A DNA stretch of 64,000 bases from Macrostomum lignano (taxonomy: Eukaryota), in the NCBI GenBank assembly GCA_002269645.1, contig NIVC01000543.1, positions 372,001-436,000 on the forward strand. The letters are read 5' to 3'. Each line of letters starts with the position of its first letter. The first letter of the stretch is position 1. This document shows, piece after piece, positions 31,713 through 35,369 of the stretch. Below the pieces are notes generated by a model. That model worked only from the letters and a program-made list of their open reading frames with translations. It made no database searches and had not been told where the DNA came from. The position numbers and the translations under genes are program-made.

Positions 31713-34173
31713 ATGGAAAGAAAAAATCAAAACGATTCAAGTTTCTCTCCTGTGATCGTACAGGATCCGCTTCAAAACCATGATGCCCCACCACCAAGAT
31801 TGACAAATTTAAAACAAACAAAATCGTACGATAAACTAATTAAGCTTTATGCAGAACTTAATTTTATATTCGGTAGTTGCAGTATAACATGGAATAGTTA
31901 GATTCAACAAAGAAAAAAATACCGTCAGGAATGCCAACCAAAGCAGATAGGAATTCAACCTCCCCACCATTTCGACCAGAGGTAGACAACATGATTTGGA
32001 TAGATACTAGAAACTCAAATATAACCGTAATCGATATTGATAATGCTGACCTATGCCCTGAGTTGAATGAACTGTGTATGACTCATTGTGATTGGGTTGT
32101 TCAGACAAACAAGGGACACCACTTTTACTTTAACAAAGTAGATGGATTGAAAGTAACGATTCAACAAAGTGTGGGTTTTGATATTCCAGCTTTAGTATTT
32201 GCTCCACCAGGTTTCTATTATGTGGATGGTGAAATGAAGGAATACAAACGTACAAAGTGCGATGGACTTATAGACATGCCAGATGTAATTCTTGATGAGA
32301 TAAATATATTAATTAAGCCACAGGATAAAAATGAAATCCAAGAACAAGATAAACAGGCACTAAAAAGCACCGTTCCATCACCCAGTTGTGAAGGAGTTTC
32401 AAAGTTGTTAAGTATAATGCAACACAAAAACCAAGACTATGATTCTTGGTACAAGGTAGCACTCATACTCCGCGACATAGACAGTGGTGATGAAATGTAC
32501 AAAGTATTCACTGATTGGTCAAAAGTAAATTATGATAAGTTCGATTCCGAATCATGTAAAAAGGTGTGGCATACCAGCTCTGCTGATCGAGAGGGCAGAC
32601 TTACTATCGGTACACTAAAGAAATGGGCAAGTGGAGAAAACTATAACAAATATAAGGAATGGAAAAGCAAATATGATTATTATGGTAGGATTGAGTTTCT
32701 TGATGATAATTTCACTGACGTTAATATAACCAACTTTGTTTATGAGTACAAGAAGAATAATATAATTTACAATAGCGATGGTATTTACTATTTTGATGAT
32801 GATAAGTGGAGAGAACTAAGTAGTATAAATGAAATATTTCTTAAAATATCACACCTTGTCAGCAGTGAGTTAAACCACCGAAAGACTAGACTCGAAATTG
32901 CAATTAAGAAGGCGGCTGATGATAAAGAGAAGTTAAAAGCACTTGAAAAGAAACTACAGAGTACAATGAAGAATATAAATTCAATACAAGGAGCCAACAA
33001 ACTAAAACAGGTAACTACTTTGTTCAAAGAGAGGTTTACTAACAATGAAATTGAATTCGACATGAAATGGAATTTGCTAGGGTTTAACGATGGAGTATAC
33101 GACCTCCTTACAGGTGAGTTTCGCGAGTATAGATATGACGATTACGTTACTAAATCGGTGGGATATAATTACTCGGATGTACTTAGAGTGAGTGATGACG
33201 ACTATGGTTTCATTGTAAATCTGCATAACCAAATTCATCCCGATCAAGAAAACAGAAAGAGTTGGGAATCCGTTATAGCCACAGCTCTAATGGGTAAGAA
33301 TGTTGAAAACTTTATAATGTTTGATGGCGCTGGTGGAAATGGCAAGGGAGTTGAGGACAACCTACTTCTTAGAACTCTAGGGTCTGATTATTCAGCACCA
33401 CTGAGTCCTGATGTTTTGAATTCACCAATAAGAATAGACAGGCCACAACCAGCCCTAGCACAAATTAATAAAAAGAGGTTGGTTATCAGTCAAGAAGTAA
33501 GCGGTGTCTTGAACAATGCATCAATAAAATTACTAACTGGTGGTGGGGTTATCCAAGCTAGAAATTTATATTCAAGCCAGTGTAATGTCGTTTTACACGC
33601 AACTCTGATAGTCGAATGCAACAACAAGCCTGACTTTAGACAAAATATTGGAGATGCAGAGAAGAGGAGAATTATCAATATTAATTACCCGTGCAAATAT
33701 ACAACAGATAACGAAATCATTGATCCTGAGAAACACACTTACAAGGCCGATCCATATTTGAAAAGTGAGGAGTTTAAGACTAAATATAAGTTTGCTGAGA
33801 TGAAACACCTACTAGAAATTTTCAAGCAAACAAAGGGTGAAATATATCCATCTCAAAATGTAATTGAAAACACTAATGAATTCATACAAAATTGTAATTG
33901 GTTTGCTCACTTCTTTGAAGCGAATTCGAATTTTTAGAAACTGAGGAAAAAACATTTATGCTTATTAGAGAAATTTACACTGCCGCAACAGAGAGTGAAT
34001 ACTATAGGACTCTAGCCCAACGTGAGAAACGTGAATTCCAACAACAATACAAAACAGATTTCTTCAAGAATCACAAAGACTATTGTAAGTATTATAAGGA
34101 TAGATATAGGCGTAGGATAGATGGTAAACAGCAAGAAACTAGAAATGTTCTGTTTTACTGTGTAAAAAAATAA
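31713..34173 (+). CDS. Prim-Pol (AEP)-PriCT-D5_N-SF3 helicase, ~820 aa if two 1-bp frameshifts are corrected
   Basis: AEP motifs VIDID, TNKGHHFYF and GFDIPALVFAPP; PriCT-like DYDSWYKVAL...WSK; D5_N LLGFNDGVYDL; Walker A GAGGNGKG; motif C IVECN. Adding one T at ~31898 and one at ~33926 joins ORFs 31713-31901, 31931-33937 and 33958-34173. Confidence 0.88.
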
Positions 34174-34346
34174 ACGAAGATGTTATCAATGCGATTACAT
34201 TGGCTGATGAGGAATAGATCTGATAGGATCCAAATAATATCTTTTATCATCTAACGGACTCATTGTTTGTTTCATAATCTCACGAATATATATTTTATTT
34301 TTTTCAGATACTTTCAGATACTTTCAGAATATATATTCGTGAGATT

Positions 34347-35369
34347 ATGAAACAAACAATGAGTCCAACAAATCTAAACAACAAAACACGTTACAAAATC
34401 CATTACAAACTGCTTCAGTATTTTATCTCACTTGGTTGCAGGGTCACCAAAGTTCACCGGGCTCTTACATTTACAGAGGAAGCGTGGATGAAACCCTACA
34501 TTGATAAGAATACCCAGTTTAGGACCAAAGCAACCAACGACTTTGACAAGAACCTCTTTAAGTTGGCCAACAACTCTGTCTATGGCAAGACTCTTGAGAA
34601 TGAGCGGAAAAGAACAAACCTGAAACTTGTTACCTCATCAGAGCCTGCTGTTATTCAGGCAAATATGTCAAAGCCGACATTCAAAGAACTCCACATCTTT
34701 AATAGCTACCTAGGTGTGATCATATTTTACAAAACCAAGGTGACGCTGCGCAAGCCGATCTATACAGGTGTCACTGTACTCGACGAATCAAAACGTCTGA
34801 TGTACCAGTTCTTCTATGGCATGAAGCAGCAGTACAAGGATAAAATGAAACTCTTGTACACTGACACAGACAGTTTTATTATGGACATTCAAACAGAAGA
34901 CATTTATCAGGACATGCTGCAGCAAAAATATTTGTTTGACTTGTCTGAGTATGATGAATCTTGCAGGACACAGAATGGCGATCAAGTGTTTGACGCCACT
35001 AACAAGAAAGTGATTGGGAAAATGAAGGACGAGATTGCTGGTGACATAATCACTGAATTCATTGGGTTGAGAGCAAAGTCCTATTTTGTAAAATGTGAGT
35101 CGTCAGACCCAATTAAAAAATCAAAGGGAATTCCGAAACGTGTGGTTAGGAAGGAAATTAATGAAGCTGAATACAGAGACGCCTTGAATTGCAACAAAAA
35201 GACATCACATGAGTTCTCAAAGCTACAATCTAAAAACCATATTATTCACACAATTCAGCAAAAGAAGATTGGACTGTCAGGTGCAGATAACAAAAGATTC
35301 ATTTTTGATGACAACATTAACAGTCTACCGTTCGGGCACTGGAGATTAGGTTTAGGAGGTGGAAGTTAG
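34347..35369 (+). pseudogene. polB: Protein-primed family B DNA polymerase, C-terminal ~340 aa only
   Basis: Motif B FKLANNSVYGKT, KPIYTG, motif C LLYTDTDS, IGKMKDE, FIGLRAKSY and DNKRF. The exonuclease domain and motif A are absent upstream. Confidence 0.93.

What the first reader, a model, noticed from the sequence alone, without database searches (positions are those of the whole stretch)
31713..35369. Two replication modules in tandem: AEP-D5 primase-helicase ahead of a beheaded protein-primed PolB
Protein-primed PolB needs no primase, and typical animal Polintons lack a full Prim-Pol-PriCT-D5-SF3 fusion, which is more typical of NCLDVs, some polinton-like viruses and phage P4-type replicons. 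Here the primase-helicase is almost intact, while PolB has lost its exonuclease domain and motif A. By eye the PolB segment also looks less AT-rich. This could record replacement of the replication machinery, or a recombinant between two viruses.
Basis: partly seen in the sequence, partly recalled or inferred. Interest (0 to 1): 0.8.

Follow-up and report, generated by a model that had tools for sequence, protein, structure and literature searches.

The report
Primase-helicase cassette beside polymerase stump
A dead virus-like insert in an animal genome carries a whole primase-helicase replication cassette butted against the last quarter of an older protein-primed DNA polymerase gene, probably a snapshot of a replication-module swap of a kind already described for this group of viruses.

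Summary
Window 31671-34173 encodes a D5/C962R-type AEP primase-SF3 helicase. It has all its domains but is broken by 2 frameshifts and 1 stop. Window 34347-35369 is the last ~335 residues of an adintovirus/Polinton-type protein-primed PolB: motifs B, C, KxY and the thumb are present, the exonuclease domain and motif A are absent, and no N-terminal remnant lies anywhere in the window. GC3 steps from 0.33 to 0.475 at the junction.

New here: the primase-helicase sits in a 4,065-bp cassette (30302-34366) bounded by the only two strong local palindromes in the window. The left palindrome starts where a host gypsy element is cut. The right palindrome ends where PolB homology starts. Relatives in environmental Polinton-like viruses often carry a similar palindrome just after this gene, so it is probably the cassette's origin. 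PolB was therefore cut in one non-homologous step, not eroded.

The best reading is a replication end-module swap in a Maverick/Polinton-type virus that later became endogenous and died. A junction made in the host chromosome is not excluded. Recent papers already describe AEP-SF3 modules in animal group-2 Maverick-Polintons and virophages carrying both replicases. I rate this a new member of a known kind, of moderate interest.

The parts
26000..30301 (+). Neighbour: 5' part of a GC-rich Ty3/gypsy-like retrotransposon (gag, protease, RT, RNase H), cut inside the integrase zinc-binding domain
   Evidence: Pfam hits: RVT_1, RVP, Retrotrans_gag, zf-CCHC, RT_RNaseH. The ORF tail matches only positions 1-26 of 59 of Integrase_H2C2, and weakly. 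No rve domain follows. GC falls from 0.72 to 0.54 at 30300.
30302..30400 (.). Left palindrome of the cassette: 30-nt arms, 93% complementary, 39-nt loop with a nested 7-bp hairpin. It is the left end of the virus-like DNA.
   Evidence: DNA fold -35.3 kcal/mol, z = -8.4. No other copy in the window. It starts exactly where gypsy homology stops.
30401..31351 (.). Non-coding leader of the cassette, with a 21-bp direct repeat x2 (30606-30647) and several imperfect inverted repeats. Possible cis-acting region.
   Evidence: No ORF of 70 aa or more.
31352..31696 (+). ORF of 114 aa, function unknown, part of the AT-rich cassette
   Evidence: No Pfam match. No homologue in related loci. GC3 0.29.
31671..34173 (+). 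AEP primase - PriCT_2 - D5_N - SF3 helicase gene (D5/C962R-like). Broken gene: 2 frameshifts and 1 in-frame stop.
   Evidence: Pfam. Family profile against solved structures. Alignments. Lesion count against P0139. 12,184 relatives in the exhaustive search, best 39-44% identity.
34256..34366 (.). Right palindrome of the cassette: 39-nt arms, 100% complementary, AT-rich 33-nt loop holding a 10-nt tandem repeat. Candidate origin. Its right arm supplies the ATG of the PolB stump ORF.
   Evidence: DNA fold -39.5 kcal/mol, z = -13.2. Unique in the window. A palindrome in the same position occurs in 18 of 76 related loci, against about 0.85 expected.
34347..35369 (+). [quoted passage not shown] The 5' three quarters are deleted and there are no internal breaks. 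Firm homology starts at about 34368.
35402..35845 (+). Adenain-like cysteine protease, 33 bp after the PolB stop
   Evidence: Pfam Peptidase_C5, 21.4 bits against a cut-off of 21.3. Homologues in PLV loci.
35850..36527 (-). 225-aa protein with a hydrophobic central segment. It has a homologue in the animal Polinton L003.
   Evidence: tblastn/phmmer to L003 20854-21624.
36639..37298 (-). 219-aa coiled-coil protein. Its homologue follows the penton gene on the + strand in sister contig L004.
37315..38136 (-). A32/FtsK-type packaging ATPase. Broken gene: one lesion (frameshift or loss of the start codon).
   Evidence: Pfam Pox_A32, 27.2 bits against a cut-off of 22.8, on the open frame..
38133..38300 (.). 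21-bp tandem repeat (about 7 copies) in the intergenic region upstream of the ATPase gene
   Evidence: family D11.
38322..39951 (-). Two virion-module genes of unknown function (154 and 404 aa), conserved and syntenic in sister contigs
   Evidence: L004-L008.
39983..41269 (+). Double jelly-roll major capsid protein, intact
   Evidence: Pfam DJR-like_dom, weak. Relatives at 72-78% identity in metagenome contigs. The low-confidence model hits DJR capsid proteins.
41295..42158 (+). Penton / minor capsid protein. Broken gene: 1 in-frame stop. It is the right end of recognisable virus-like DNA.
   Evidence: A single 273-280-aa ORF in sister contigs L004 and L005.

Best explanation
The region 30302-42158 is a dead, truncated endogenous copy of a Maverick/Polinton-type (adintovirus/MELD-like) virus in an animal genome. 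Its left end is not the usual TIR-PolB end. It is a self-contained 4.07-kb replication cassette made of a terminal palindrome, a repeat-rich leader, a small ORF, a D5/C962R-type AEP primase-SF3 helicase gene, and a second ~110-nt palindrome 83 nt after that gene.

The cassette is joined by one non-homologous junction to the last quarter of the resident protein-primed PolB gene. That stump keeps its native, tightly packed downstream context (protease, ATPase, capsid genes).

Most likely a virus of this lineage swapped its PolB end module for a primase-helicase module taken from a PLV/virophage-like source. The useless PolB stump had not yet decayed when the chimera entered the germ line, here inside a gypsy copy. 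The copy then accumulated disabling mutations and lost its right end.

Inferred mode of action while it was alive: the helicase's C-terminal region recognises the palindromic origin next to its own gene, the SF3 helicase melts the AT-rich centre, the AEP domain lays primers, and a host or helper polymerase elongates. The stump lacks the exonuclease domain and motif A and cannot polymerise.

Shown: the identity of the parts, the exact borders, the composition step, the palindromes and their recurrence in relatives. Inferred: origin function, the order of events, and that the junction was made in a virus.
For: - Domain identities.
- The PolB N-terminal three quarters are absent from the whole window.
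- The stump is followed after 33 bp by the protease and shares GC3 with the virion genes (0.475 against 0.408), while the cassette has 0.326.
- The only two strong local palindromes in about 52 kb flank the cassette. Their outer edges coincide, to within a few bases, with the end of gypsy homology and the start of PolB homology.
- A palindrome in the same place, within -30 to +200 nt of the gene end, occurs in 18 of 76 related loci against 0.011 per equal window in the background. In 10 of 17 cases the arms carry tandem units of 6-10 nt (mostly 8-10), against 19% of random segments.
- In plasmid pRN1 the origin is a 100-bp stem-loop 3' of the prim-pol/helicase gene orf904 (PMC3869888).
- The cassette sits exactly where the replication end module belongs and in the same orientation as PolB.
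- Literature: AEP-SF3 modules often replace pPolB in animal group-2 Maverick-Polintons. Virophages with both pPolB and a D5 primase-helicase, and terminal palindromes linked to non-pPolB replicases, are described. An end-module turnover model exists.
- The stump deviates at 5 of 77 conserved columns, equal to the family median, so the cut is recent relative to family divergence.
Against: - No second copy of the junction could be found, so nothing shows that the chimera ever replicated.
- No integrase, tyrosine recombinase, TIR or TSD was found.
- The right end is missing and the locus is a patchwork beside a 12-kb TTAGGG array.
- The cassette carries 3 lesions in about 2.5 kb against 2 in about 7.8 kb for the rest. 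This is not significant (one-sided binomial p about 0.1, my own arithmetic), but it would fit a separate history.
- The composition step fits a chromosomal juxtaposition of two unrelated fragments equally well.
- The closest primase-helicase relative with downstream context (L092, 37% identity) has neither a PolB nor a strong palindrome after the gene.
- The window's right palindrome lacks clear tandem units in its arms.
Confidence: 0.5

Rival explanations
1. Chromosomal patchwork. Two unrelated pieces of virus-derived DNA were joined in the host chromosome by non-homologous repair: a 4.07-kb primase-helicase cassette released at its two palindromes, and a 5'-truncated Polinton-type fragment. 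This happened either at one break that captured both or in successive rearrangements. On this reading the tandem arrangement says nothing about viral replication.
For: - The left neighbour is a host gypsy element cut in mid-integrase at the palindrome edge.
- The right block ends right after the penton gene, with no terminus.
- There is a pure 10-kb TTAGGG run 2 kb away and satellites in between.
- GC3 steps at the junction.
- Lesion density is higher in the cassette.
- Both cassette borders lie at the base of palindromes, where cruciform cutting would release a fragment. This last point is inference.
Against: - Two rare virus-derived fragments would have to land side by side.
- The cassette would have to land precisely in the replication gene, in the same orientation, leaving every morphogenesis gene untouched. 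By a rough estimate of mine that is about 1 in 10 by chance, even given a hit within the element.
- The combination of an AEP-SF3 module with this kind of virion module is a known viral architecture.
- A terminal palindrome abutting host DNA is what integrated elements with non-PolB replicases show.
Confidence: 0.3
2. Assembly artefact. One or more junctions (gypsy/cassette, cassette/PolB, penton/flank, or the internal telomere array) are chimeric joins made during library preparation or assembly.
For: A 12.4-kb, nearly perfect TTAGGG array lies inside the contig with 7 kb of other sequence beyond it. Several abrupt changes of composition occur within 20 kb.
Against: The palindrome after the primase-helicase gene is a recurrent feature of independent relatives, so it is not a library scar. 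The junctions are clean and the stump ORF runs in frame from the palindrome arm. No evidence of misassembly can be obtained from the sequence alone.
Confidence: 0.08
3. Working two-protein replication system. The element used both genes, with the PolB C-terminal fragment retained under selection as an accessory (for example DNA-binding) subunit of the primase-helicase replisome.
For: The stump ORF is uninterrupted, has an ATG and an AT-rich upstream sequence supplied by the palindrome, and keeps family-conserved residues at the usual rate.
Against: It lacks motif A, the exonuclease domain and the N-terminal regions. An intact 1-kb ORF is what chance predicts at this element's lesion density (about 0.7 by my own estimate). 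None of 80 related primase-helicase loci has any detectable PolB. No homologous short PolB next to a primase-helicase was seen.
Confidence: 0.05

Closest known systems
Group-2 Maverick-Polintons (Polintoviricetes, animal genomes) with AEP PrimPol-SF3 helicase replication modules (bioRxiv 10.64898/2026.06.19.733378)
   Same: Animal host. Double jelly-roll capsid, penton, A32 ATPase and adenain-like protease, together with an AEP-SF3 helicase in place of a working pPolB.
   Different: Here a PolB stump is still present next to the helicase module. No rve integrase, tyrosine recombinase or TIR could be found. Membership of group 2 by capsid phylogeny was not tested, because the capsid shows no sequence similarity to the one Polinton and the PLV capsids I had for comparison.
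Endogenous virophages and PLVs of Halocafeteria seosinensis carrying two replication genes and terminal palindromes (bioRxiv 10.64898/2026.07.28.741278)
   Same: [quoted passage not shown] Palindromes lie at element termini next to host DNA and are associated with non-pPolB replicases.
   Different: Those are protist virophages, apparently with both genes present. Here the host is an animal, the virion module is different, PolB is reduced to its last quarter, and a second palindrome lies exactly at the junction.
Entomopoxvirus-associated PLVs (CBEV_PLV1, AHEV_PLV2) with the end-module turnover model (PMC11296320), and Meld19810 (bioRxiv 10.1101/2024.03.25.586562)
   Same: Adintovirus/mavpol-type virion genes combined with a D5-like primase-helicase. 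The model predicts an intermediate in which the old PolB has become useless.
   Different: Those genomes pair the primase-helicase with a tyrosine recombinase and have no PolB remnant. The model expects gradual loss by mutation, whereas here three quarters of PolB went in a single junction.
Plasmid pRN1 of Sulfolobus: ORF904 (prim-pol + SF3-type helicase) and its origin (PMC3869888)
   Same: The initiator has the same domain logic (Prim-Pol, PriCT, D5_N-type helicase). The essential origin is a ~100-bp stem-loop immediately 3' of the initiator gene. That matches the position and size of the right palindrome here and of the palindromes in 18 of 76 relatives.
   Different: An archaeal circular plasmid, and no sequence similarity of the origins was tested. 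Origin function is shown experimentally for pRN1 and only inferred here.
Rumen virophages (hybrid virophage virion module plus Polinton-type pPolB; PMC4409740)
   Same: A replication-module exchange within the Polinton-like supergroup between primase-helicase and pPolB types.
   Different: The exchange runs in the opposite direction, and no remnant of the replaced gene is reported in the abstract I read.

Membership tests
D5/C962R-like AEP primase - SF3 helicase fusion | AEP (Prim-Pol) catalytic domain with the acidic DxD motif, the sGxH-type motif and the third acidic motif | tested here: met
   The motifs align with relatives that carry PF09250. Pfam Prim-Pol on the window protein alone is below cut-off (18.4 against 22.8 bits).
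D5/C962R-like AEP primase - SF3 helicase fusion | PriCT_2 and D5_N linker domains | tested here: met
   PF08707 at 45.3 bits and PF08706 at 48.9 bits, both above cut-off.
D5/C962R-like AEP primase - SF3 helicase fusion | SF3 helicase core (Walker A, Walker B, motif C) related to poxvirus D5 | tested here: met
   The invariant G-x-G-K and downstream N/E/R columns are kept. The family profile hits ASFV C962R at 4e-52 and D5/E5 at about 1e-43. DUF5906 is below cut-off (22.9 against 27.6 bits).
D5/C962R-like AEP primase - SF3 helicase fusion | One uninterrupted reading frame | tested here: not met
   2 frame switches and 1 in-frame stop relative to P0139.
[quoted passage not shown] | 3'-5' exonuclease domain (Exo I-III) and the N-terminal region | tested here: not met
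   The fragment aligns only to the last ~325 residues of its relatives. The N-terminal half of the L003 PolB finds nothing in the window.
[quoted passage not shown] | Palm motif A | tested here: not met
   The motif A block of the relatives lies upstream of the first aligned residue of the fragment.
[quoted passage not shown] | Motif B, motif C, KxY region and thumb | tested here: met
   Invariant and near-invariant columns are shared. Structural matches to adintovirus, MELD-virus, bidnavirus and adenovirus PolB, E from 1e-20 to 1e-6. Pfam on the fragment alone gives no hit. The sequence profile and Foldseek against PDB give no hit.
Maverick/Polinton (Polintoviricetes) element | Morphogenesis module: DJR capsid, penton, A32-type ATPase, adenain-like protease | tested here: met
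   DJR-like_dom is weak, but relatives at 72-78% identity carry it. The penton is identified by synteny and homology. Pox_A32 is above cut-off. Peptidase_C5 is at cut-off.
Maverick/Polinton (Polintoviricetes) element | rve-type integrase | tested here: not met
   No rve hit in any ORF of 30.3-42.2 kb. The integrase of L003 finds nothing in the window.
Maverick/Polinton (Polintoviricetes) element | Terminal inverted repeats and a target-site duplication | tested here: not met
   No inverted repeat links the two ends. The right end is evidently truncated, so this does not rule out that they were once present.
Polinton-like elements with terminal palindromes and non-pPolB replicases (Halocafeteria type) | A palindrome at the element's extremity next to host DNA, together with a non-pPolB replicase | tested here: inconclusive
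   Met at the left end (30302-30400 abuts the cut gypsy element). The right end is missing and no TSD can be read.

The most novel reading that the evidence does not exclude
The ~100-nt palindromes that flank the primase-helicase gene may be its cognate origins and, at the same time, the physical borders of a portable 'initiator plus origin' cassette that moves between Polinton-like viruses by breakage at the palindromes. This locus would then show the cassette's two exact ends and the act of replacement itself, with PolB severed at the outer base of the origin. The recurrent palindromes downstream of the gene in environmental PLVs, often with tandem units in their arms, would be the first candidate origins for this very large replicase family (12,184 relatives).
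Probability: 0.3. Interest if true: 0.65.

Novelty: new member of a known kind. Interest (0 to 1): 0.4.

Why it matters
Replication-module switching between protein-primed PolB and helicase-primase replicases is inferred all over the Polinton-like supergroup, almost always from incongruent gene trees. A copy that still holds the stump of the old polymerase, cut at a defined structural element of the incoming module, gives the junction itself. It shows the loss happened in one non-homologous step rather than by slow decay, and that the incoming unit brought its own cis elements.

The palindrome downstream of the gene recurs in relatives. That offers concrete, checkable candidates for the replication origins of primase-helicase PLVs and virophages, whose replication is otherwise uncharacterised. 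If the junction turns out to be chromosomal, the locus is simply two dead viral fragments in a subtelomere-like patchwork.

Tried and rejected
1. Sister elements. Capsid relatives at 72-78% identity exist, but only on contigs of 3.7 kb or less. Scans of IMG/VR and JGI metagenomes with the capsid found nothing.

2. The word-index protein search gave a best primase-helicase hit of only 30%. The exhaustive search showed it had missed relatives at 39-44%, so 'no close relative' was partly a limit of the method.

3. Sequence searches of both proteins against solved structures found nothing as single sequences. The PolB profile and Foldseek against PDB also found nothing. Only BFVD gave named PolB hits.

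4. Rfam found nothing.

5. I first read the two palindromes as fold-back repair scars copied from the broken gypsy and PolB ends. I rejected this because the arms are not derived from either flank and palindromes occur in the same position in independent relatives.

6. A parvovirus-like 4-kb replicon with hairpin ends is not supported. The relatives of the gene sit inside PLV-type contigs of 10-30 kb.

7. Co-phylogeny of the primase-helicase with the ATPase and protease. The window's ATPase and protease resemble those of one subgroup of primase-helicase PLVs, but primase-helicase scores do not single out that subgroup. No conclusion.

8. The difference in gene order from sister contig L004 looked at first like a post-integration inversion. 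I dropped this because both arrangements have tight native spacing (16 and 47 nt).

9. Profile comparison of the capsid with a PLV capsid candidate and with the L003 Polinton capsid found no similarity, so the capsid lineage (group 1 or group 2) remains unassigned.

10. The last two look-ups on PolB relatives (L089; L090 from Actinia tenebrosa) found ordinary Polintons with PolB followed by an integrase and no primase-helicase.
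Full report
WHAT IS THERE

The window is animal DNA. A neuron-navigator-like gene (large exon 8823-12794, AAA-lid exon 7705-8679) and an arrestin-domain exon are recognisable. There is also a 12.4-kb, almost perfect TTAGGG array at 44159-56642.

Between 30.3 and 42.2 kb lies AT-rich virus-like DNA. Its parts, from left to right:
- a non-coding leader;
- a 114-aa ORF;
- a primase-helicase gene (31671-34173);
- a C-terminal PolB fragment (34347-35369);
- an adenain-like protease (35402-35845);
- three minus-strand genes, including an A32-type packaging ATPase (37315-38136; Pox_A32 above cut-off);
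- two conserved unknown genes;
- a double jelly-roll capsid gene (39983-41269);
- a penton gene (41295-42158).

To the left is the 5' part of a GC-rich Ty3/gypsy element.

Primase-helicase. The longest open frame of the gene matches D5_N and PriCT_2 above Pfam cut-offs, and DUF5906 and Prim-Pol below them. The catalytic motifs of the AEP and SF3 domains are kept in alignments. A profile of the family hits ASFV C962R (4e-52) and poxvirus D5/E5 (about 1e-43) among solved structures. The gene is domain-complete but not intact: against the closest full-length relative there are 2 frame switches and 1 in-frame stop.

PolB. The ORF has 351 relatives at up to 48% identity, mostly in animal genomes (sea anemone, coral, spider, aphid, ant). 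It always aligns to their last ~325 residues. Motifs B, C and KxY and the native C-terminus are present, while motif A and everything upstream are missing. A complete Polinton PolB (L003) finds no N-terminal remnant anywhere in the 64 kb. A model of the fragment (pLDDT 77) matches adintovirus, MELD-virus, bidnavirus, adenovirus and phi29-like polymerases.

Composition. The impression by eye is real. GC3 is 0.326 in the left block, 0.475 in the stump and 0.408 in the rest (p = 1.4e-6 and 2.4e-5).

THE TWO MODULES HAVE DIFFERENT RELATIVES

The primase-helicase family is huge: 12,184 representatives, the best at 39-44% identity. Where context is available, it sits in virophage- or PLV-type contigs. 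None of the 80 IMG/VR loci fetched has a PolB detectable with a profile of the stump's family. The closest locus with downstream context has none either.

The stump's nearest relatives sit in classical Polintons, where PolB is followed by an rve integrase (L003, L089, and L090 from Actinia tenebrosa).

The capsid has relatives at 72-78% identity in metagenome contigs. Those contigs are too short to show which replicase they carry.

THE NEW FINDING: A CASSETTE WITH EXACT BORDERS

The window holds only two strong local palindromes in about 52 kb of non-telomeric sequence.
- Left: 30302-30400, with 30-nt arms (DNA fold z = -8.4).
- Right: 34256-34366, with 39-nt perfect arms and an AT-rich loop (z = -13.2).

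They bracket the primase-helicase block. The left one begins exactly where the gypsy polyprotein stops, inside the integrase zinc-binding domain. The right one ends within a few bases of where firm PolB homology begins. Its right arm provides the stump ORF's ATG.

Neither palindrome is copied from its flank, so they belong to the middle unit, which is 4,065 bp long.

In related loci a comparable palindrome starts within -30 to +200 nt of the end of the primase-helicase gene in 18 of 76 cases, where about 0.85 would be expected. In 10 of 17 of these the arms carry tandem units of 6-10 nt (mostly 8-10), against 19% of random segments. This is the layout of an initiator gene with its origin alongside. 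The experimentally mapped origin of plasmid pRN1 is a 100-bp stem-loop 3' of its prim-pol/helicase gene (PMC3869888).

I therefore read the right palindrome as the cassette's origin and the left one as the element's terminal palindrome. This is inference. It follows that PolB was severed in a single non-homologous event at the outer edge of the cassette. The stump still matches family-conserved columns at the family's median rate (5 of 77 deviations), so the cut is recent relative to family divergence.

HOW THE JUNCTION AROSE

Virus-level swap (my estimate 0.5). Points in favour:
- The cassette replaces precisely the replication end of the genome, in the same orientation, and leaves all morphogenesis genes in place.
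- AEP-SF3 modules with this type of virion module are a known architecture.
- Integrated elements with non-PolB replicases have terminal palindromes next to host DNA.

Chromosomal juxtaposition (0.3). Points in favour:
- The left neighbour is a broken host retrotransposon.
- The right end of the element is missing.
- There is no integrase, TIR or TSD.
- The locus lies 2 kb from a telomere-type array.
- The cassette carries more lesions per kb (3 against 2; not significant).

An assembly artefact (0.08) and a functional role for the stump (0.05) are minor alternatives.

State of the copy: primase-helicase, 2 frameshifts and 1 stop; ATPase, 1 lesion; penton, 1 stop; PolB, 5' three quarters deleted. 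The other genes are open.

COMPARISON WITH WHAT IS KNOWN

- Group-2 Maverick-Polintons often replace pPolB with SF1/SF3 helicases fused to an AEP PrimPol (10.64898/2026.06.19.733378).
- Entomopoxvirus-associated PLVs and Meld19810 combine adintovirus-type virions with a primase-helicase and a tyrosine recombinase.

So the kind of event is known, and even predicted by a published model. What this locus adds is an animal example in which the old polymerase is cut at a defined border of the incoming module. It also points to conserved palindromes after the gene as candidate origins.

VERDICT

This is a new member of a known kind, with interest 0.4. The most novel reading not excluded is that the palindromes are both origins and the borders of a portable initiator-plus-origin cassette (probability 0.3).

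Noticed in passing
window 44159-56642: A 12.4-kb TTAGGG array, including one perfect run of 10.3 kb, lies inside the window. The G-rich strand points rightwards, 119-bp and 84-bp satellites lie just before it (43171-44124), and about 7 kb of other sequence follows it. It is either a very young interstitial telomere or fusion point, or an assembly join. The virus-like DNA ends 2 kb to its left.
   Followed up: partly
loci L010, L045, L048, L050, L067, L071, L072, L078 and others (IMG/VR): Strong palindromes (arms of 17-47 nt, loops of 0-79 nt), often with tandem 8-10-nt units in the arms, lie immediately downstream of D5-like primase-helicase genes in environmental PLV-type contigs. They occur in 18 of 76 loci, against about 0.85 expected. 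They are candidate replication origins, and the papers I read do not describe them.
   Followed up: partly
window 36639-37298 (-) compared with L004 2915-3571 (+): The coiled-coil gene that follows the ATPase on the minus strand in the window has its homologue (43% identity over the N-terminal 76 residues) directly after the penton gene on the plus strand in sister contig L004. Both contexts are tightly spaced, so gene order differs between close capsid relatives.
   Followed up: partly
window 26000-30301: The Ty3/gypsy-like element is GC-rich (0.58, CpG o/e 0.94) and has open gag and pol frames, but it is cut inside the integrase zinc-binding domain and no 3' LTR is present in the window.
   Followed up: partly
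window 24695-25985: A pair of 49-nt inverted repeats (80% complementary) encloses 1.2 kb just left of the gypsy element, which looks like a small TIR transposon or MITE. The region 15-25 kb is filled with 18-24-bp minisatellite arrays.
   Followed up: no
window 3892-12794 (-): Host genes: an arrestin N-domain exon (3892-4578) and a neuron-navigator-like gene with a 1,323-aa uninterrupted exon (8823-12794) plus an AAA-lid exon (7705-8679). Together with the TTAGGG repeats this indicates an animal host whose telomere repeat is TTAGGG.
   Followed up: partly
L003 7909-11671 and PolB hits P0010-P0129: All 120 listed relatives of the PolB stump are 595 aa or shorter, and many are about 583-589 aa. 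In L003 the polymerase is read as two overlapping ORFs (712 + 586 aa), and the N-terminal one has a weak Endonuclease_7 match. A recurrent split or insertion in this PolB clade may exist.
   Followed up: no
window 38133-38300: Seven copies of a 21-bp tandem repeat lie upstream of the packaging ATPase gene, between it and the next gene. Purpose unknown.
   Followed up: no
method: For this lysine- and asparagine-rich protein the word-index homology search was saturated by spurious candidates. It returned 9 hits, the best at 30% identity. The exhaustive search found 12,184 hits, the best at 39-44%.
   Followed up: yes
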